Shown: positions 51,890 to 64,000 of the stretch, one piece after another | How the letters are laid out: the number at the start of each line of letters is the position of its first letter | Numbering within the stretch: position 1 is the first letter of the stretch | Assembly: GCF_006345805.1 (NCBI RefSeq) | Contig: NC_043007.1 | Span: 10,478,001 to 10,542,000 of the forward strand | Reading direction: 5' to 3' | Source: Octopus sinensis | Taxonomy: Eukaryota | DNA length: 64,000 nucleotides | The notes under the pieces: model-generated | What the model saw: the letters and a program-made list of their open reading frames with translations, nothing else | Databases searched by the model: none | Told to the model about the DNA's origin: nothing | Position numbers and translations under genes: made by a program

Positions 51890-52378
51890 TGTATGTATAC
51901 TAAATTTAAACGATATTAAAGGGTACGAATTGACCACACAAATACGCTAGAAATAGCGATGGTCAATCCGCACCCTTTAACATAGTGATTTGTATAATTA
52001 TAAATTTAGTATAAAATGTTACCTACAAGGTTTTTTCTTTCATGCTGACCACTTGATAAAATCATTAAAATGAGCTGCATACGGATCGGACTGTTTACAA
52101 CATATCTTTGTACCATCAAATACTGGACATTAAATTCTTTGAATATTAATTTATTTGCAAATGGATCGCTAAATTATCAAATATATCTTTTAATTGACTT
52201 ATATAAAATACATTTTTGTTACATAATTTCATCCTTGAACGTTAATTCACTGATTTTACAATTTTGTTGTTGCGCTCAGACGTTCACTCCTTTTTACACC
52301 CAGGAATTTACCTGATCGTAACAATGCATATACATAAACATACATACATACATACATAAACATACATACATACATACA

Positions 52379-52430
<52 letters not shown>

Positions 52431-52588
52431 ATCAATTCAACAATGAAATAACGATGATATAATTAAATTATACCATATAGAAAAAACTTAAATATACAAT
52501 AAAATATATACCAATAATTAAGTAAAGTACAAAATAATAAATAAAAAGAATATAATTGGCAAAAACTACATATGTAATTATATATATA

Positions 52589-52642
<54 letters not shown>

Positions 52643-52643
<1 letters not shown>

Positions 52644-52920
52644 TTAGAGACAAAACCACTATTTTGCAAAACAAACAAGGAAAGACTTAATCAATACATA
52701 AAATTTTAATAAATAGTCAAAAAAACCGCCACTACAATCGTTTCTTGTCTTGATCGACAATCTTCAGGTGGATAACTGAATTATTGGAAGTCCACCTGAA
52801 GATTGTCTATCAAGACAAGAAACGATTGTAGTGGCGGTTTTTTTGACTATTTATTAAAATTTTATGTATTGATTAAGTCTTTCCTTGTTTGTTTTGCAAA
52901 ATAGTGGTTTTGTCTCTAAT
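52643..52920. repeat. Palindrome with 130-bp arms carrying mirror hammerheads
   Basis: 52643-52772 pairs with 52791-52920 with 1 mismatch; 18-nt spacer. Confidence 0.95.
52792..52834 (+). ncRNA. Type I hammerhead ribozyme core; mirror at 52729-52771 (minus)
   Basis: ccac-CTGAAGA(52796)-ttgtct atca agacaa-GAAA-C GATT GT-A|gtgg. Confidence 0.75.
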
Positions 52921-53007
52921 AATATTTTATAATATTTTACTATAAAATTGGATTTAATCCTAAATCTGATTTTTTTTCCCTGTAAATTTGGATTTATTCC
53001 CTAATAT

Positions 53008-53051
<44 letters not shown>

Positions 53052-53069
53052 TATATTAAATTAGAGATA

Positions 53070-53198
53070 AAACCACAATTAGGCAAATCAAACAGTGAAA
53101 AACATATGCCAATACATAAAATTAATCTAAAAATCTAAAAGTTAAAAATAAAAAAATTATTAAAATAATTTAAACTTATAAATTTTAAATATATATAT

Positions 53199-53237
<39 letters not shown>

Positions 53238-53596
53238 TGTATGTATATTTCTATATTTATATATTATTTTGTTTATTAATTAATTTATTTATTATTTATT
53301 TTTTTATTTATTTTTTTATATAAATATCAAAAGTATTAAAAGTTATCTTTTATTAAACTTTTAATACTTTTGATATTTATTAAAAAAAAAAAATAAATAA
53401 TAAATTAATTAATTAATAAACAAAATAATATAGAAATATAGAAATATACATATATATATATATTTGTATATATATATTTAAAATTTATAAGTTTAAATTA
53501 TTTTAATAATTTTTTAATTTTTAACTTTTATATTTTAAAATTAATTTTATGTATTGACATATGTTTTTCACTGTTTGATTTGACTCATAGTGGTTT
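53070..53596. repeat. AT-rich imperfect palindrome
   Basis: Arms ~53070-53344 and 53356-53596 around an 11-nt loop. Confidence 0.85.
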
Positions 53597-53876
53597 ATAT
53601 ATATATATATAATATTAGGGAATATTATTCCAAACTTACAAGGAAAAATTCAAGTTAGTAATACTAAATCAAATTTCACAATATATCATATATGTATATA
53701 AATTAGAGAAGAACCACCTATTATCAATTCCACAATGAAATAACGATGATATAATTAAATTATACCATATAGAAAAAAATTAAATATACAATAAAACATA
53801 TACCAATAATTAAGTAAAGTACAAAATAATAAATAAAAAGAATATAATTGGCAAAAACTACATATGTAATTATATA

Positions 53877-53932
<56 letters not shown>

Positions 53933-53935
<3 letters not shown>

Positions 53936-55051
53936 TGATCCCTCGCTACTTCGCGGTTCAACTATCGCGGATTCACGACTTCGCGGGTTTTTAGAATATG
54001 TATATATGAACACCTAAAATTTTTCATTAAATCCTTTAAAATATGTCCTGGCGAACCCGGTTGCTTCTGTGGATGCCGCCCCAGAAGACGAAAATTTTAA
54101 CTTGAAGGTATACTGGCGGTAGTACACAATTGCTACGTGCCTCCGAAATATCTAGAAAACATTGCAAGAAATGAAGCCTCCCACCATTAACGCGAGCTGA
54201 AAAAATTTGTGCTCCGAGGTTATTTACGACGACAAGAGATTTACACCTGCAGAAATCCAACACTCCGCAGTACAGAAAGCTTTGCAGTTGGCTGCGATCA
54301 TTGGAGGTGACGGATTTGCAGACATGACCACGGGAGACGTCGGTACATTATTAGACTGCCACTCTCAGCCGCTAACCGACGCAAACCTCGAAGACTTGAC
54401 GAAGTCGGCCAGCGAAGAAGAAGAAGAAACGCAGCAAGTTGTCGATCAAAGTGGCTTGACTTTGGAACGGCTGGCCAAGCTCTGCAACCTGGCTAAAGAA
54501 TTGAAAGAGGGATCACGGGAATGGGAACAACGATATGGTTCGTTCTGTGCAATTTTGCAACAAGGTCGACGAAGTCATGAATCCCTACAAGATGCTCTTT
54601 GAACAGAAAAAGAAGCAGCGGCAGCAACTTCCTATTACAATGCTTTTGTAGCCTCGCAAACAAGAGCCAGTTCCTGCTGCTACTACTAGGGTTGTACCTT
54701 CGGAAGAATTGGAAGGGGTGTCCCAGGAAAGGGCACCGCCGTCAGCTTCATCATCATCATTTCTACTGCACAGCAAATTCATCACCATTATCATTGAAAT
54801 TTTACTTCAACTTCTTTCGTGTTGAGTACAGTAAAAAATCTTTATTTTTTAAATCTAAAGTGTTATTGCTTAACAGTTGTCCTTGTTATTAATACACTAC
54901 TGTAATGGGGGTGTTGTTAACAGTACAGGGAGGGTTTCAAAAATTCAAATGTACGTTAAATGAATACTGTAAATATGGTGTCCCTACTTCGCGGAAATTC
55001 AGTTATCGCGACCGGTATTGGAACCAATCTACCGCAATAAACGAGGGATCA

Positions 55052-56015: not shown

Positions 56016-56325
56016 TACATGTTAAAACGAAATCTTTTACAAGATTAAATGCAAATATTTCCGAGTTGAGAAAATAGCGTTCAATTTATGTTAAGATTAT
56101 TGTTTTTACTATTGTTAACCTTTGAATCTTTCGGTAGTTTCAACATTCTCATCATTTTTAACTTTAACGAAGTTACATTTCAATTCTTACAATGTTTCAC
56201 TGCTTTATTATTGATTCGTTATTTTTTTATTTGTTTCTTGATATTGTTCTTTTTTTTTGTCTTTGTTTCTTCATATTGTTCTTTTTTTTTTTGTCTTTGT
56301 TTGATTTTTTATTTCCTAGTTTTCA

Positions 56326-57549
56326 TTAATTGGTCTTAAGGCTTCCTTCTTTTTGGACTTCCACCTTTTTTTCAAAACAGTGACAGATTTCCATTTGAAA
56401 TTTGCTTGGCAGCAAAAGCCTCTCGTCTAATTCTTCTTGACTATACGTGAATGATTCGGTTTCATCTTTTCTATAAAATGGTATCTTCTCTAATGGGTTT
56501 TCGCTTCCAGCTCCAAAATCAAAAACAGCTTTACAGAATATTTTCTCATGTTTTCCGTCCTGGTCATTTTCATCTTCATTTGTGCCTTTGTATTTATAAG
56601 ACCGATAGATTATATCCTTCAATTTCTTCCGGGCCTCTTTGAGACTTTCATTATCCTCATTCTTTAATATCTCCTCCAAAATACTATCTGTAAAATAAGT
56701 AAACTCCTTCATATCGTCGACCTTTTCGAAAATTTGTAGTTGTTCATTGGCAGAGTTGAAAACTTTATCAAGTAGTTTATTAAAAAGAAGAGCAGTTTTG
56801 TGTTTGCAAGCAGTTTTATGTTGTCGATATCGTGCATAAAACATATCATAGAAATTATCAAGACATTTGTCTCTGTAGCATATTTGATCACCTATTACTT
56901 TGGACATTTTCATCATTCTTTCGTGATCAAAGGATTTTCCAAAACCAAGAAAATGGGAATCTCTAGCTAGGTAATCCCATTTATCAACGTCGATGTTATA
57001 GGATTTATTGTTGATGATTTGGTAAAGAAATTTTGGTCTCTGAGATTTTTCTGGTTTACCAGTAATGAGATCTTTTATGAAATCAATTTCATTACGCTCA
57101 ACTTTAATATCTTCGTTCTCTTTAAAAAGATGCTCCAACATTTCACATGATGCATCTTCATGTTCCCACTCTTCACCTCCAGCTTTCTTGCGATACTCGT
57201 TGATAATTTCTTGAAAGACATGAGAAAAAGGCGCATGTCCTAAATCATGACATAAACCAGCAATTTCAACACAAAGCATATCTCGATCAGATATTTCCAG
57301 ATCGGGATTTTGCTGTTTAAGATGGCGAACCATTTTCCCAGCTAGGTAACACGTTCCTAGACAATGCTCAAATCTATTATGTGAAGCCGATGGATAAACG
57401 TAATTAACCAAACTTAATTGTTTTATATTACGTAATCTCTGAAATTGTGTTGTATTCATAATATCAACACAGAGTGGCGGAAGCTCCATAGATCCATGAA
57501 TAGCGTCCTGAAAAACCTGGTCCCATTTTGTAACACGTGAGTAGGCCAT
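56326..57549 (-). CDS. SAMHD1: SAMHD1-like HD-domain phosphohydrolase, copy A (407 aa, intronless, no SAM domain)
   Basis: DAIHG, TQFQRLRNIKQL, ASHNRFEHCLG, GLCHDLGHAPFSH, IDVDKWDYLARD, NFYDMFYAR and DFG..ENP....FY are collinear with SAMHD1; metal ligands H62/H101/D102/D189 intact. Confidence 0.95.
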   Translation of the reverse strand: MAYSRVTKWDQVFQDAIHGSMELPPLCVDIMNTTQFQRLRNIKQLSLVNYVYPSASHNRFEHCLGTCYLAGKMVRHLKQQNPDLEISDRDMLCVEIAGLCHDLGHAPFSHVFQEIINEYRKKAGGEEWEHEDASCEMLEHLFKENEDIKVERNEIDFIKDLITGKPEKSQRPKFLYQIINNKSYNIDVDKWDYLARDSHFLGFGKSFDHERMMKMSKVIGDQICYRDKCLDNFYDMFYARYRQHKTACKHKTALLFNKLLDKVFNSANEQLQIFEKVDDMKEFTYFTDSILEEILKNEDNESLKEARKKLKDIIYRSYKYKGTNEDENDQDGKHEKIFCKAVFDFGAGSENPLEKIPFYRKDETESFTYSQEELDERLLLPSKFQMEICHCFEKKVEVQKEGSLKTN

Positions 57550-57685
57550 TATTAAATTATCAGGAAAATATCTAACTTACTTTTTGGGTTGCCGTTTATG
57601 TTGCTTTTGTTTTGCTGGTGGTCGTCCTGTTGATGTTGCAGTGTGTGTTGGTTTTGAAAACTGGAGTAGAAATATAAATCAATCA

Positions 57686-57800
57686 GATATGTTCAGTACG
57701 ATATTTCTAATATCTGATTTGAAAGATCTCAGTCATATTGGCATTTGGATGTCGGAATGCCTCAAATAATGTAACGGATCCAAATGTGTCTCCGTGGTTG
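57686..57800 (-). promoter_or_regulatory. Conserved upstream blocks shared by both SAMHD1-like genes
   Basis: TTAGAAATATCGTACTGAACA (57690-57710 / 62060-62080) and CAACCACGGAGACAC (57786-57800 / 61970-61984) are identical in both copies. Confidence 0.5.
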
Positions 57801-57975
57801 GAAGCAAGACAATGGAATAAACAATGTTGCTATGTCAAAAGTTTATTTAAAAGTAAACCCAACAACCGTCACTAACAACACCACCACTGCCACCATCACC
57901 ACCACTATCACCACCACTGTTAATACTAAACAGCAGTAAAAATCAGTGACTGTGAAACTAAAAATGAAACTTGTA

Positions 57976-58160
<185 letters not shown>

Positions 58161-58649: not shown

Positions 58650-59770
58650 TATTTTCAGCCTTCTATTTCAATTTGTTTTATCATTTCTCTTTTAGGTAAT
58701 GCTGTCCCTGCTAGGAATAGTACCTTGCTTCTTTCTAGGTACTTTATAGTACACTTCTAGAATCTGAATTCCATTCTAATGTCAGCGCTAAAACAGTGAA
58801 CTGTGTTTACTACGGAACTGACTTTTGCCTCATCCATTTTATACACCTTCAAATCGTCCATGAAGAGGAAGTGATTGATTGTTTGAGATTTTCCATTTAG
58901 CTGATATCCAAGGTTCATTTTCCTAAGTACCAGGGCCAGAGGAATCATGCAGAAAACAAAAAGCAATAGAGATAAGCTATCTCCCTGAAAAAATTCCTCT
59001 TCTGATTCCCAGACTGCCCAAGCTTTTTCCGTAGGCTGTCGACTCAGTTTTCCACCCAACCATACTTCTCTTCAGAAAATATGTTACATTCCTCGCAGTT
59101 CCAAACAGATTCAAGCATAATCCATGAATGTGGAAACATGTCATAAGCTTTGCTATCGTCAATCCAGGCCATTCCCAAATTCGTTCTCCTTCCTTTACAA
59201 TCTTGCATTACCATTTTGTCTATCAATGATTGGTCTTTGGTACCTCTACAACTCCTTCTACAACCCTTTTTGTTCCGTTGGTAACATATTGTTCTCATCA
59301 AGAAATGTGCACAGTTCTTCTCAAATTCCTCCTGACAGTAACTTTCACATTAATGGCAGGCAAGGAAATTGGCTTGTGGTTGTCAGCAGCATTTATATTT
59401 AATGCATCCAGGCACAACACAATCCATCCTTTTGTCAACTAACCCGAGATTTTTTCTCCATCGATCAATGCATTAAATTGCACTGCGATCACTTTATGGA
59501 ACCTACTGATCTTTTATTCATCGAAATCCCAGTACATCAAGCCCTGGGCTTATCTTTTTACTCTTCTGTGAAGTGGATAGCCTCTTGCTGAGGATAAGTT
59601 GTTTGCTTTCGGCTGCAGAGCCCATTCAGATGGAGTATTATGTTGTTCTTGCTTACTCCATCTCTTACCCTAGAACTATCGACTTACATCATCATCAGGA
59701 ACTAATCTTTCACGTTCTATAAGTTCTACTGGGCACTCTGTTCTAATTTCCCTTATATTCCTATTGAAGC
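58650..59770 (-). mobile_element. R4/Dong-clade LINE RT core relic
   Basis: DQSLIDKMV...WID, FQGDSLSLLLF, HFLFMDDLK, MEF. Confidence 0.85.
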
Positions 59771-61450: not shown

Positions 61451-61480
61451 TCCTCGAATAGTAGCAGTAGAAGAAGAAGA

Positions 61481-61525
<45 letters not shown>

Positions 61526-61541
61526 TGTGGTGGTGGTGGTG

Positions 61542-61573
<32 letters not shown>

Positions 61574-61698
61574 GGTGGTAGTAGTAGTAGTAGTAGTGTA
61601 GTAGTAGTAGTAGTAGTAGTAGTAGTATCATATAACTTTCACTTTGAATTTCACATCCGCACTCAAGGTTTACTATAGAATAGTATCAGCAGCAATAA

Positions 61699-61735
<37 letters not shown>

Positions 61736-61739
61736 GGTG

Positions 61740-61790
<51 letters not shown>

Positions 61791-61825
61791 TGGTGGTAGT
61801 GGTGGTGGTGGTAGTAGTAGTAGCG

Positions 61826-61867
<42 letters not shown>

Positions 61868-62213
61868 CTGTTTTTTATGGTGGTGAAGTGGTGGTGGTGT
61901 GAGGAGGTTGTGTTTATTTTTGAGCCATCATTTGATATAGCAACACCGTTTATTTTCTTGTATTGCTATCAACCACGGAGACACTTTTTGATGACTTATG
62001 TTATTTCAGACATCAGACGTCTAAATGCCAATGGAACTGAGATCTTTTCGAATCAAATGTTAGAAATATCGTACTGAACACGTCTGTATAATTGTTATTT
62101 TTTCTCCATATTTCAAAACCACACGCACAACGACAACGAGGCCACAAGCAGCAGCAACAACAATATATAAAACAACTAAAAAGTAAGTTAGATACTTTCC
62201 TGATAATTTCATA

Positions 62214-63455
62214 ATGTCCTACTCACGCAGTACATATTGGGATCAGGTTTTTCAGGACGCTATTCATGGAGCTATGACGCTCCCATCACTCTGTGTAGAT
62301 ATTATGAATACAACTCAATTCCAGAGATTGCGTAATATCAAACAATTAGGTTTGGTTTATTACGTTTATCCATCAGCTTCACATAACAGATTTGAGCATT
62401 GTTTGGGGACATGTCATCTTGCTGGCAAAATGATTCGCCATCTTAAGCAGCAAGATCCCGATCTGCCAATATCTGATCGAGATATGCTTTGTGTTGAAAT
62501 TGCTGCTTTGTGTCATAATTTAGGACATGGTCCCTTCTCTTACGCCTTTCAAAAAATTATCAACCAACATCGAGAGGAAAATGGAGGTGAAAAGTGGGAA
62601 AATAAAAATGCAACGTGCAAAATGCTGGATCATCTTCTTGAAAAAAACCCACATATTAACGAAGAACTTAAGTCTGATGAGATTGATTTCATAAAAGATA
62701 TTATAATTGGTGAAACAAGAAATTCTCAGAAGCCAAAATTCTTTTACCAAATTGTCAACAATACAGGCTATAAAATCGACGTTAATCAATGGGATTACCT
62801 GGCAAGGGATTCCCATTTTCTTGGCATTGGAAAATCCTTTGATCACGGAAGGATATTGAAAACGTCCAAAGTAATTGATGGTGAAATATGCTACAGAGAC
62901 AAAACTCTTGTTAATTTCTATGATATGTTTTATTCCCGATATCGATTACATAAAGCAGCTTACCAACACAAAACTGTTCTCTTGTTTAATAAACTACTTG
63001 GCGAGGCCTTCAGATCCGCAGATAAACACATGAAAATTTTCGAAAAGGTCGATGATATGAAGAAATTTACTTATTTTACAGATAGTATTTTGGAGGAGAT
63101 ATTAAAGAATGAGAATAATGAAGGTCTCAAAGAAGCTCAGAGCAAATTGGAGAGTATGTTTTACCGGTGTTATAAATACAGAGGTACAGACAAAGATGGA
63201 AATAACCGAGACGGAGACCAAGAGAAAATATTCTGTGAAGCCAATTTGGATTATGGAGCTGGAGAGGAAAACCCATTGGAGAAAATACCATTTTATAAAA
63301 AAGGTGAGAAGAAATCCTTCAAGTATAATCAAAAGGGATTAGAAGACAGGCTTTTGCTGCCAAAAAAATTTCATTTGAAAATCCGTCATTGTTTTGAAAA
63401 GAAAGTGAATAACAAAAATGAAGGAAGTAAGAAGAAAAAAGAAAGTGATTTTTAA
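62214..63455 (+). CDS. SAMHD1: SAMHD1-like copy B (413 aa, intronless), predicted pseudoenzyme
   Basis: Roughly 70% identical to copy A by eye; motifs read ALCHNLGHGPFSY, WENKNA and IDVNQWDY instead of HD, SH, HE and DVDK. Confidence 0.95.
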   Translation: MSYSRSTYWDQVFQDAIHGAMTLPSLCVDIMNTTQFQRLRNIKQLGLVYYVYPSASHNRFEHCLGTCHLAGKMIRHLKQQDPDLPISDRDMLCVEIAALCHNLGHGPFSYAFQKIINQHREENGGEKWENKNATCKMLDHLLEKNPHINEELKSDEIDFIKDIIIGETRNSQKPKFFYQIVNNTGYKIDVNQWDYLARDSHFLGIGKSFDHGRILKTSKVIDGEICYRDKTLVNFYDMFYSRYRLHKAAYQHKTVLLFNKLLGEAFRSADKHMKIFEKVDDMKKFTYFTDSILEEILKNENNEGLKEAQSKLESMFYRCYKYRGTDKDGNNRDGDQEKIFCEANLDYGAGEENPLEKIPFYKKGEKKSFKYNQKGLEDRLLLPKKFHLKIRHCFEKKVNNKNEGSKKKKESDF

Positions 63456-64000
63456 AAACGAACAATAAATAATGAAAAAAATAACAGATAAGAAAGAATC
63501 TTGAGAAAAAGCAATAACAAAACAATCAGATCGAATATGAGGAAACAAAGAAGAAACGGATGTGTGAAATAAGAACTAAGACATTCTGAAAGATAAAAAT
63601 AATACAAGTATATCGAAACTATTGACAGGTTCCAAGGTCAGAAATAACCATATAGAAATTAACATTTTTGTTTTCACTAGAAAATATTTTCTTTTAACCA
63701 AATCTTTTCAATTTTCCAATTTTTGTTTTAATTTGAAACATGTAATTTTATAACGCAACGTTAGAAATGTATATGAGGAAGTAAAGGAATTTTGTTCAAG
63801 ATTTGGTAAAAGCTAGAAAAGGAAAGAAATATATTGAAACTACTGAAAAATTCAAAGGACATTTCTAAACGAACGATAATCTTTTTGTAAATTAAACGTA
63901 TTTTTAATATAAGATATTTTCCTATAACTAAATGTCTTAGATTTATAAAAAAAAAACATAATTCTTTGCTTTTAAATTATACCTACTCATTGGGTCACGT

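What the first reader, a model, noticed from the sequence alone, without database searches (positions are those of the whole stretch)
62214..63455. SAMHD1-like copy B is an intact-ORF pseudoenzyme facing its catalytic twin
Copy B carries N102 (human D207), Y110 (H215), N130/K131 (H233/E234), N191 (D311) and Q192 (K312). Two of four metal ligands and most catalytic residues are lost; D207N and D311 substitutions are standard inactivating mutations in human SAMHD1. The 413-aa frame is unbroken and predicted oligomer/allosteric residues (Q142, R145, R333, R352, K354, N358, H376, K377 equivalents) are kept. Clustered loss at the active site is not what random decay predicts. Because SAMHD1 works as a tetramer, B could be a regulatory or dominant-negative subunit, a nucleotide or nucleic-acid sensor, or a decoy for viral antagonists. 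These roles are hypotheses.
Basis: partly seen in the sequence, partly recalled or inferred. Interest (0 to 1): 0.9.

Follow-up and report, generated by a model that had tools for sequence, protein, structure and literature searches.

The report
Octopus catalytically dead SAMHD1 paralogue
An octopus gene copied from the antiviral nucleotide-degrading enzyme SAMHD1 has lost its catalytic residues, yet it stays intact under selection in three Octopus species and a near-identical copy is made as protein, so it is a natural "dead enzyme" that probably still binds nucleotides or partner subunits.

Summary
Window 62214-63455 (+) is an unbroken 413-codon SAMHD1-like frame carrying N102, Y110, N130/K131 and N191/Q192 at human D207, H215, H233/E234 and D311/K312. 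Copy A (56326-57549, -) keeps all six. The genome is Octopus sinensis.

B is not a lone twin. It belongs to a "B-type" clade within a family of at least 15 SAM-less, single-exon SAMHD1-like genes. The clade has three near-identical copies within 24 kb, one divergent copy and one fragment. Intact counterparts exist in O. vulgaris (99% identical, same six substitutions) and O. bimaculoides (86%, four of the six).

The loss is targeted. Six of the seven changes at 63 ultra-conserved positions are catalytic. No allosteric-site position has changed.

Inside the B-type clade dN/dS is 0.45, and neutrality is rejected (p = 2e-9). The AlphaFold model is confident and matches SAMHD1 cores (TM about 0.86). 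A 97%-identical O. vulgaris B-type protein was detected by mass spectrometry in skin mucus.

So B is a selected pseudoenzyme. Its actual role (regulatory subunit, nucleotide or nucleic-acid binder, or decoy) remains untested.

The parts
62214..63455 (+). Copy B coding sequence: 413 codons plus stop, single exon. SAM-less SAMHD1-like HD-domain protein of the catalytically dead 'B-type'.
   Evidence: AF2 pLDDT 91.9; TM 0.86 to SAMHD1 cores
62517..62519 (+). Codon AAT = N102 at human D207 (metal ligand). GAT in all catalytic-type paralogues.
   Evidence: D207N is a laboratory-inactive mutant (PMC5872582)
62541..62543 (+). Codon TAC = Y110 at human H215 (general acid). CAT in catalytic-type paralogues.
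   Evidence: H215A has no detectable activity (PMC7311409)
62601..62606 (+). Codons AAT AAA = N130 K131 at human H233 (Mg3 ligand) and E234.
   Evidence: H233A lowers kcat about 300-fold
62784..62789 (+). Codons AAT CAA = N191 Q192 at human D311 (metal ligand) and K312.
   Evidence: D311N is used as an HD-domain mutant
61916..62213 (+). About 300 nt upstream block duplicated together with the gene. It is about 80% identical to A's upstream and 97-100% identical to other B-type copies. Presumed promoter/5'UTR; it contains a GTAAGT 25 nt before the ATG.
63464..63469 (+). AATAAA, 8 nt after B's stop codon (candidate poly(A) signal).
56326..57549 (-). Copy A coding sequence (407 aa). Catalytic-type paralogue that keeps H167, H206, D207, H210, H215, H233, E234, D311 and K312, but has Q at D218 and N at D137.
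   Evidence: the exact protein is in NCBI's O. sinensis annotation; peptide KDETESFTYSQEELDER detected in mucus
57550..57844 (-). A's upstream block, homologous to B's.
56308..56313 (-). AATAAA, 12 nt after A's stop codon.
57978..58160 (.). (CTA)61 microsatellite about 430 nt upstream of A. It reads (TAG)n on A's coding strand.
61459..61867 (.). (TAG)~136 microsatellite about 350 nt upstream of B, in the same orientation relative to the gene as the one upstream of A.
58757..59301 (-). Degenerate reverse-transcriptase fragments (decayed retroelement) in the A-B spacer.
   Evidence: RVT_1, E = 0.002, below the Pfam cut-off

Best explanation
Copy B is a member of an Octopus-specific clade ('B-type') of SAMHD1-like paralogues. 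These have lost dNTP triphosphohydrolase chemistry but are kept by selection and are translated.

Shown here:
- An ancestor of the clade, older than the O. bimaculoides / O. sinensis split, acquired D207N, H215Y and H233N.
- Individual copies then lost further active-site residues: E234K, D311N, K312Q, H210Y, R366L, R164I.
- Over the same period the fold, the structural core and every allosteric-site residue stayed fixed.

Inferred: B still folds like SAMHD1. It still binds nucleotides at the two allosteric sites, and probably in the crippled pocket. It therefore acts as a non-hydrolysing, nucleotide-binding subunit. Most likely it assembles with itself and/or with the co-expressed catalytic paralogues (such as neighbour A), modulating the activity of the complex rather than catalysing.
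For: Active site dead.
- N/Y/N at D207/H215/H233 in all B-type copies. B adds K/N/Q at E234/D311/K312.
- In human SAMHD1, H215A has no measurable activity and H233A is about 300-fold down. Both mutants still tetramerise, and H215A still binds substrate (PMC7311409).
- D207N and D311N are standard inactive mutants (PMC5872582).

Loss is targeted.
- Six of the 7 changes at 63 ultra-conserved positions are catalytic (p = 2.7e-4).
- 9 of 19 catalytic/substrate positions carry B-type-novel residues, against 0 of 18 allosteric positions (p = 7e-4).

Retained.
- B-type is monophyletic with 100% support.
- Intact copies exist in O. sinensis (3 plus 1), O. vulgaris (at least 3) and O. bimaculoides.
- Pairwise omega for Os_B vs Ob_B is 0.40 (LRT p = 9e-5).
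- Branch-model omega within the B-type clade is 0.45. Omega = 1 is rejected (LRT 35.7, p = 2e-9). This is no higher than in the catalytic paralogues (0.63).

Fold kept. AF2 gives pLDDT 91.9 and pTM 0.90. TM is 0.85-0.87 to human, pig and fungal SAMHD1.

Translated. O. vulgaris OctVul6B005787P1 (all six substitutions, 97% identical to B) is a high-confidence master protein in skin mucus. It has 24% coverage, 9 peptides, 15 PSMs, 6 group-unique peptides and 1 protein-unique peptide. An A-specific peptide is in the same dataset.
Against: - No transcript or peptide evidence exists for B itself in O. sinensis. Its exact protein is absent from the public collection, whereas A's is present.
- The peptide-level proteomics table was truncated, so I could not see which peptides support the B-type group.
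- Tetramerisation and allosteric control are inferred from the human enzyme. A fungal SAMHD1 is active as a monomer and is not allosterically regulated (PMC12042053).
- The whole octopod family has N at AL1 residue D137, so the activating nucleotide may differ.
- Omega of 0.45 is only moderate constraint.
- Gene conversion among tandem copies is visible as 100%-identical stretches. It violates the single-tree assumption of the branch test.
- No test of A-B interaction was possible.
Confidence: 0.6

Rival explanations
1. B-type proteins have a stand-alone, non-catalytic job that does not involve catalytic SAMHD1 paralogues. Examples: binding single-stranded nucleic acid, sequestering dNTPs, or acting as a decoy for pathogen factors that target the catalytic copies.
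For: The evidence for retention, fold and translation is the same as for the best explanation. Three near-identical B-type copies sit in tandem, and copy-number amplification would suit a stoichiometric binder or decoy. Substrate-pocket residues Q149, L150, Y315, D319, H370, Y374 and Q375 are kept.
Against: Strict conservation of all AL1/AL2 residues is most simply explained by nucleotide-driven assembly, as in SAMHD1. B-type and catalytic-type genes sit head-to-head twice in the cluster (A/B and L007/L002), and both types are found in the same mucus proteome. No signal of positive selection was looked for or found. No cephalopod virus antagonist of SAMHD1 is known to me (own knowledge).
Confidence: 0.22
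2. B is still an enzyme. Either coleoid A-to-I RNA editing recodes the mRNA back towards the catalytic residues, or the altered site carries out different chemistry or uses a different substrate.
For: Three of the six changes are G-to-A at first codon positions: GAT>AAT twice and GAA>AAA. Inosine at those positions would restore D207, E234 and D311, and CAA>CIA would give R at K312. Coleoids recode heavily (own knowledge). H167, H206, R164, Y315, D319 and R366 are kept.
Against: H215Y (CAT>TAC) and H233N (CAT>AAT) cannot be reverted by A-to-I editing, and H215A alone abolishes activity. Different B-type copies lose different further active-site residues (H210Y, R366L, R164I, K312Q). That looks like relaxed constraint on the pocket, not a newly optimised site. 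No editing data were available.
Confidence: 0.1
3. B is a young, functionless duplicate that has not yet been broken. The apparent constraint is an artefact of gene conversion from functional neighbours.
For: B is not in NCBI's protein set for O. sinensis. There is mosaic identity among tandem copies. The family contains truncated and fragmentary copies. Omega is moderate (0.45).
Against: The defining losses are shared with O. bimaculoides (dS 0.19) and with the divergent L007 lineage (dS 0.33-0.39), and frames are intact throughout. Gene conversion from catalytic copies would restore the catalytic residues rather than preserve N207/Y215. 48 of 49 non-catalytic ultra-conserved residues are intact. 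A B-type protein is detected by mass spectrometry.
Confidence: 0.08

Closest known systems
Human SAMHD1 (dNTP triphosphohydrolase; e.g. PDB 6TXC, 4BZC)
   Same: Same HD-domain catalytic-core fold (about 37-40% identity, E = 1e-74, TM 0.86). H167, H206, R164, Y315, D319, R366 and nearly all AL1/AL2 allosteric residues are conserved.
   Different: B has no SAM domain and no C-terminal regulatory tail, and is about 75 residues shorter within the core. D207N, H215Y, H233N, E234K, D311N, K312Q, D218Q and D137N differ. It is single-exon and one of many tandem paralogues.
Engineered inactive human SAMHD1 mutants (D207N, D311N, H206R/D207N, H215A, H233A)
   Same: B carries the very substitutions D207N and D311N that are used as 'HD-domain dead' controls (PMC5872582). 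It also lacks H215 and H233. The alanine mutants at those positions lose activity but still tetramerise, and H215A still binds substrate (PMC7311409).
   Different: Those are laboratory point mutants. B is a natural gene lineage carrying several such changes at once, and it has been maintained for at least the age of the O. bimaculoides / O. sinensis split.
Catalytic-type octopod SAMHD1-like paralogues (copy A, L002, L003, L008, L009, the long-insert copies L011-L014, Argonauta hians P0013/P0017)
   Same: Same SAM-less single-exon architecture, the same upstream block, N137, and Q/E218. They are 65-75% identical to B.
   Different: All keep the full H..HD..D tetrad plus H210, H215, H233, E234 and K312.
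Teleost SAMHD1-like paralogues with a single metal-ligand substitution (P0051 stickleback D207N; P0101 dragonet D311N/K312H; P0114 cod D311N)
   Same: These are sporadic losses of an HD metal ligand in lineages with expanded SAMHD1-like families.
   Different: Only one or two positions are changed, and H215 and H233 are kept. I did not test them for selection, orthology or expression.

Membership tests
SAMHD1-type dNTP triphosphohydrolase | HD-domain catalytic-core sequence and fold | tested here: met
   phmmer E = 1.7e-74 to SAMHD1 chains; Pfam HD domain; AF2 model TM 0.85-0.87 to SAMHD1 structures
SAMHD1-type dNTP triphosphohydrolase | H...HD...D metal-binding tetrad (H167, H206, D207, D311) | tested here: not met
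   B has H, H, N, N. 99 of 102 distant homologues have HHDD.
SAMHD1-type dNTP triphosphohydrolase | Catalytic histidines H215 (general acid) and H233 (Mg3 ligand) | tested here: not met
   Y110 and N130. 101 of 102 homologues keep each His.
SAMHD1-type dNTP triphosphohydrolase | Allosteric nucleotide sites AL1/AL2 (Q142, R145, R451; R333, R352, K354, N358, H376, K377, K523) | tested here: met
   All conserved in B and in every core B-type copy. Exception: D137 is N across the whole octopod family.
SAMHD1-type dNTP triphosphohydrolase | N-terminal SAM domain | tested here: not met
   Pfam finds only HD. B's residue 11 aligns to human residue 116. The same holds for all octopod copies, including the canonical-like one on C18.
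SAMHD1-type dNTP triphosphohydrolase | dNTP hydrolysis and nucleotide-dependent tetramerisation | not testable with these tools
   Needs recombinant protein; no multimer prediction was available.
Pseudoenzyme (retained, catalytically dead paralogue) | Homologous to an active enzyme family but lacking residues essential for catalysis | tested here: met
Pseudoenzyme (retained, catalytically dead paralogue) | Intact frame conserved across species after the loss | tested here: met
   O. vulgaris (413 aa, 99%), O. bimaculoides (402 aa, 86%), and O. sinensis paralogues
Pseudoenzyme (retained, catalytically dead paralogue) | Purifying selection after the loss (dN/dS < 1) | tested here: met
   omega 0.40 pairwise (p = 9e-5); omega 0.45 for the clade, omega = 1 rejected at p = 2e-9. 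Caveat: gene conversion.
Pseudoenzyme (retained, catalytically dead paralogue) | Expressed as RNA or protein | tested here: inconclusive
   Met for a 97%-identical O. vulgaris B-type protein (9 peptides, 6 group-unique). There are no data for B itself in O. sinensis, and the peptide list was truncated.
Pseudoenzyme (retained, catalytically dead paralogue) | Measured absence of the ancestral activity | not testable with these tools
   Inferred only from human mutant data.
Decaying duplicate (unprocessed pseudogene) | Frame disruptions, dN/dS near 1, and substitutions spread evenly over conserved positions | tested here: not met
   No stops or frameshifts; omega significantly below 1; 48 of 49 non-catalytic ultra-conserved residues kept

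The most novel reading that the evidence does not exclude
Octopuses have evolved a two-component SAMHD1 system. Dead B-type subunits keep both allosteric nucleotide sites and co-assemble with catalytic paralogues into mixed tetramers. Those paralogues are encoded head-to-head beside them, twice in the cluster. In this reading B-type acts as a genetically encoded rheostat or dominant-negative regulator of dNTP depletion in an expanded antiviral/anti-retroelement family. A more exotic variant adds A-to-I editing at N102, K131 and N191 to tune the site, but this is very unlikely to restore activity because Y110 and N130 cannot be edited back.
Probability: 0.3. Interest if true: 0.72.

Novelty: new variant of a known kind. 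Interest (0 to 1): 0.58.

Why it matters
SAMHD1 is a central regulator of dNTP pools and a restriction factor for retroviruses, DNA viruses and retroelements. Its dNTPase-independent functions are debated, and they are usually probed with exactly the point mutants that B carries naturally (D207N, D311N, loss of H215/H233).

A lineage that has kept such a dead protein under selection for millions of years is a natural experiment. It keeps every allosteric residue, sits in several copies beside catalytic paralogues, and is made as protein. That argues that the non-catalytic SAMHD1 scaffold is useful in its own right.

It also gives a tractable pair (A and B, each about 410 aa, single exon) for testing how dead subunits affect an allosteric tetrameric enzyme. 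Finally, it flags an unreported large SAMHD1-like expansion in octopus innate-immunity or genome-defence biology.

Tried and rejected
1. Transcript evidence. B's exact protein, and those of the neighbouring B-type copies, are not in the 15-billion-protein collection. No Logan or transcriptome-derived members exist in their 90% clusters. So there is no RNA evidence either way.

2. Peptide-level proteomics. Twelve B-type tryptic peptides were searched in the supplements of PMC11431876. The only hits were in the protein table, because the peptide table was cut when stored.

3. RNA-editing rescue. Editing could restore only D207, E234 and D311, not H215 or H233. Kept as a low-probability rival.

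4. Retrogene origin. Rejected as the explanation for the single-exon structure. The canonical-like octopus copy on C18 is also one open frame. The duplicated unit carries about 300 nt of upstream sequence, which indicates DNA-level tandem duplication.

5. A/B pair duplicated as one unit. The second head-to-head pair (L007/L002) shares only the gene units with A/B, not the spacer. In addition, dS for A vs L002 (0.06) differs from dS for B vs L007 (0.33). Not supported.

6. Literature. Searches for 'SAMHD1' with pseudoenzyme, cephalopod, octopus, or paralogs/expansion found no description of dead SAMHD1 paralogues.

7. Branch model. The first run failed numerically. It was rerun with clipped probabilities.

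8. Multimer prediction of A4, B4 and A2B2.
Full report
WHAT IS THERE. Window 62214-63455 (+) is an uninterrupted 413-codon frame. A paralogue, copy A, is encoded at 56326-57549 (-), 407 aa, 70% identical to B. The two genes are head-to-head. The 4.66-kb spacer holds trinucleotide microsatellites and decayed reverse-transcriptase fragments. These are by far the longest ORFs in the 64 kb. A 413-codon open frame has probability 8.6e-14 at this base composition.

B matches human SAMHD1 chains at E = 1e-74 over residues 11-326, plus a weaker C-terminal stretch. Pfam finds only an HD domain, with no SAM domain. An AlphaFold2 model built on a 59-sequence alignment is confident (pLDDT 91.9, pTM 0.90). 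It superposes on human, pig and fungal SAMHD1 catalytic cores with TM 0.85-0.87.

I took the residue mapping from the HMMER alignment to PDB chains and verified it in a script. The result:
- N102 = D207
- Y110 = H215
- N130/K131 = H233/E234
- N191/Q192 = D311/K312
H167 and H206 are retained. The codons in B are AAT, TAC, AAT, AAA, AAT and CAA. In every catalytic-type paralogue they are GAT, CAT, CAT, GAA, GAT and AAA.

Copy A keeps all six residues. One correction: AL1 residue D137 is N in B, in A and in the whole octopod family. In human SAMHD1, D137N switches the AL1 activator from GTP to XTP without harming catalysis (PMC7311409).

CONTEXT: A LARGE FAMILY, NOT A TWIN PAIR. The window is C11:10478001-10542000 of a 2.72-Gb genome. 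A six-frame search finds at least 46 SAMHD1-like pieces. They fall into these groups:
- a tandem cluster on C11 from 10.534 to 10.712 Mb
- copies on unplaced contigs
- a long-insert subfamily (about 530-675 aa) on C16, C12172 and C13395
- one more canonical-like copy on C18 (45% identical to A)

All are single open frames without a SAM domain. The duplicated unit is about 1.6-1.85 kb. It comprises the CDS, about 300 nt of conserved upstream sequence and a short downstream stretch. This points to DNA-level tandem duplication.

THE B-TYPE CLADE. Tabulating the catalytic positions across 23 octopod sequences gives a clean split. All 14 catalytic-type copies keep R164, H167, H206, D207, H210, H215, H233, E234, D311 and K312. 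This group includes two Argonauta hians homologues of the expanded family and the canonical-like copies from both genera. Nine sequences share D207N + H215Y + H233N/K:
- O. sinensis B
- L004 (C11:10545777-10547015, +, 93% identical to B)
- L006 (C11:10562640-10563878, -, 92% identical to B)
- the divergent L007 (75%)
- O. vulgaris P0001/Ov_B (99%), Ov_B2/P0124 (97%), P0123 and P0006
- O. bimaculoides XP_052834274 (86%)

Protein and nucleotide trees recover the core B-type clade with 100% support. The nucleotide tree separates all B-type copies from all catalytic-type copies with 100% support. So the triple loss arose once, before the O. bimaculoides / O. sinensis-vulgaris split. Argonauta has only catalytic-type copies, so the loss came after the split from that lineage.

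Later losses are scattered among copies: E234K, D311N, K312Q, H210Y (L004, P0123), R366L (Ov_B) and R164I (P0123). This looks like continuing erosion of a pocket that is no longer used.

The same six substitutions appear in the independently assembled O. vulgaris genome, in the same gene order (A orthologue, B orthologue, next B-type copy). That excludes an assembly artefact.

IS THE LOSS TARGETED? In 102 non-octopod SAMHD1 homologues (fish, amphioxus, corals, bivalves, fungi) each of the six positions is at least 98% conserved. I defined 63 ultra-conserved positions: at least 95% identical in those 102 sequences and invariant in 13 catalytic-type octopod copies. B differs at seven of them. 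Six belong to the 14 catalytic positions. The seventh is the conservative S237T next to H233/E234. Forty-eight of the 49 non-catalytic ultra-conserved residues are intact (Fisher p = 2.7e-4).

Across core B-type copies, 9 of 19 catalytic/substrate positions carry residues never seen in the catalytic paralogues. The figure for allosteric positions is 0 of 18 (p = 7e-4). Residues fixed specifically in B-type cluster at human 207-237.

SELECTION. I wrote a Goldman-Yang-type codon likelihood with F3x4 frequencies. Pairwise comparisons that run entirely inside the B-type clade give omega of about 0.40:
- Os_B vs Ob_B: dN 0.074, dS 0.185, LRT against omega = 1 of 15.3, p = 9e-5
- Os_B vs L007: omega 0.47, p = 7e-5

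On a 12-sequence tree, a three-ratio branch model gives these estimates:
- omega 0.45 within the B-type clade
- omega 0.47 on the stem
- omega 0.63 among catalytic paralogues
Fixing B-type omega at 1 is rejected (LRT 35.7, p = 2e-9). B-type is, if anything, slightly more constrained than the catalytic copies (p = 0.047).

Caveats: constraint is moderate, and mosaic stretches of 100% identity among tandem copies show gene conversion, which a single tree ignores. Conversion from catalytic copies would restore the lost residues rather than preserve their absence.

EXPRESSION. B's exact protein is not in the public protein collection, whereas A's is. NCBI's O. sinensis model P0002 is a chimera. 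It joins residues 1-283 of the B-type gene L006 to the C-terminal 135 residues of A. The junction lies in a 9-residue identical zone where a GT..AG splice is formally possible.

Direct protein evidence comes from a TMT proteome of O. vulgaris skin mucus (PMC11431876, Suppl. S1). OctVul6B005787P1 / A0AA36FCK9 is a B-type protein of 413 aa, with all six substitutions, 97% identical to B. It is listed as a high-confidence master protein with these figures:
- 24% coverage
- 9 peptides and 15 PSMs
- 6 peptides unique to its protein group
- 1 peptide unique to the protein

An A-specific peptide (KDETESFTYSQEELDER, residues 361-377) and several long-insert paralogues are in the same dataset. The stored peptide table was truncated, so I could not see which B-type peptides were observed.

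MECHANISM.
Shown: the fold is retained, the catalytic residues are lost, the allosteric residues are retained, selection acts on the clade, and a near-identical paralogue is translated.
From the literature on the human enzyme:
- H215A has no detectable dNTPase activity, yet it tetramerises normally and binds substrate.
- H233A is about 300-fold down and still tetramerises (PMC7311409).
- D207N and D311N are used as enzymatically inactive HD-domain mutants (PMC5872582).
Inferred: B cannot hydrolyse dNTPs but can still bind nucleotides and oligomerise. It therefore functions as a non-hydrolysing subunit or nucleotide-binding protein. Because the allosteric sites of SAMHD1 are built at subunit interfaces, their strict conservation in a dead protein favours nucleotide-dependent assembly, with itself or with catalytic paralogues.

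Two things temper this. A fungal SAMHD1 works as a monomer without allosteric control (PMC12042053), so the human paradigm may not transfer. And copy A itself has Q at D218. Human D218A is about 40-fold down, and no Q occurs among the 102 homologues. Its kinetics are therefore uncertain too.

RIVALS.
(a) Stand-alone binder or decoy. Cannot be separated from the heteromer model with these tools.
(b) Still an enzyme via A-to-I editing or new chemistry. Editing could restore D207, E234 and D311 but not H215 or H233. The heterogeneous further losses argue against a re-optimised site.
(c) Functionless young duplicate. Contradicted by shared losses across species, omega below 1, the targeted pattern and protein detection.

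NOVELTY. The genes are annotated only as 'SAMHD1-like' or 'hypothetical'. Full-text searches found no description of catalytically dead SAMHD1 paralogues or of the octopus expansion. Pseudoenzymes are a well-known category, so I rate this a new variant of a known kind. Single metal-ligand substitutions in three teleost SAMHD1-like paralogues hint that this may recur where the family expands.

Noticed in passing
G000 C11:10.534-10.712 Mb, plus C12284, C12172, C13395, C16:7.556-7.565 Mb and C18:515032-516306 (loci L001-L020): O. sinensis carries a large expansion of SAM-less, single-exon SAMHD1-like genes: at least 15 long copies and many fragments. Several are truncated or broken. One more canonical-like copy (45% identical to A, D137 and D218 kept) sits alone on C18.
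   Followed up: partly
L011, L012, L013 (C13395, C12172) and L014 (C16:7555500-7565499): A subfamily of 530-675 aa carries a 150-270 aa insert rich in imperfect repeats (motifs like SESKMQSNIEGTIKGKILGT) between the HD core and the C-terminal lobe. One copy also has an N-terminal (KSPD)n run. Its O. vulgaris counterparts are among the better-covered SAMHD1-like proteins in skin mucus (PMC11431876).
   Followed up: partly
window 56326-57549 (copy A) and all family members: The whole expanded family has N at AL1 residue D137 (human D137N is activated by XTP instead of GTP) and Q or E at D218. A has Q218 and C374, so the 'catalytic twin' may itself have altered regulation or reduced turnover.
   Followed up: partly
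L022:5113-5263 (O. vulgaris orthologue of A): The O. vulgaris assembly has one extra T in a T5 run at about codon 12 of the A orthologue. This shifts the frame, and the annotated protein starts at an internal Met (335 aa). It is either a homopolymer assembly error or a real lesion in the catalytic neighbour.
   Followed up: partly
C11:10562640-10563878 (L006) joined to window 56326-57549 (A): NCBI model P0002 ('SAMHD1 homolog isoform X1') is a chimera of a B-type N-terminal 283 residues and A's C-terminal 135 residues. The join lies in a 9-aa identical zone where a GT..AG intron of about 27 kb is formally possible. B and L004 would lie inside that intron on the opposite strand. It could be a real spliced transcript or a mapping artefact.
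   Followed up: partly
C11:10690216-10695302 (L007 minus strand, L002 plus strand; locus L024): This is a second head-to-head pair of one B-type and one catalytic-type gene, mirroring A/B. The spacers share no homology beyond the gene units, so the repeated arrangement is unexplained.
   Followed up: partly
window 57978-58160 and 61459-61867: Long (CTA)n and (TAG)n microsatellites lie 350-430 nt upstream of A and of B. On each gene's own coding strand the repeat reads (TAG)n. L009 has a similar trinucleotide run upstream. The repeat seems to travel with the gene unit.
   Followed up: no
window 62180-62213 and equivalent positions in all paralogues: A strongly conserved AAAAAGTAAGTTAGAT..TTTCCTGATAATTT.ATAATG block lies immediately 5' of the start codon. 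It includes a consensus 5' splice-site hexamer (GTAAGT) 25 nt before the ATG. Its meaning (UTR intron remnant, promoter element) is unknown.
   Followed up: no
C11:10549247-10549510 (L018) and L022:18901-19161: An N-terminal B-type fragment (residues 1-88, 91% identical to B) lies downstream of L004. It is conserved at the same place in O. vulgaris, so it is an old truncated copy.
   Followed up: no
window 52001-54000: A 2-kb stretch has only 19% G+C and is packed with AT, ATAC and TA microsatellites. The rest of the window upstream of A has no ORF longer than 172 aa and no Pfam hits among the ORFs tested.
   Followed up: no
proteins P0051 (Gasterosteus aculeatus), P0101 (Neosynchiropus ocellatus), P0114 (Gadus morhua): Among 102 distant SAMHD1 homologues, three teleost 'SAMHD1-like' paralogues carry D207N or D311N. 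These may be independent dead paralogues in other expanded families.
   Followed up: no
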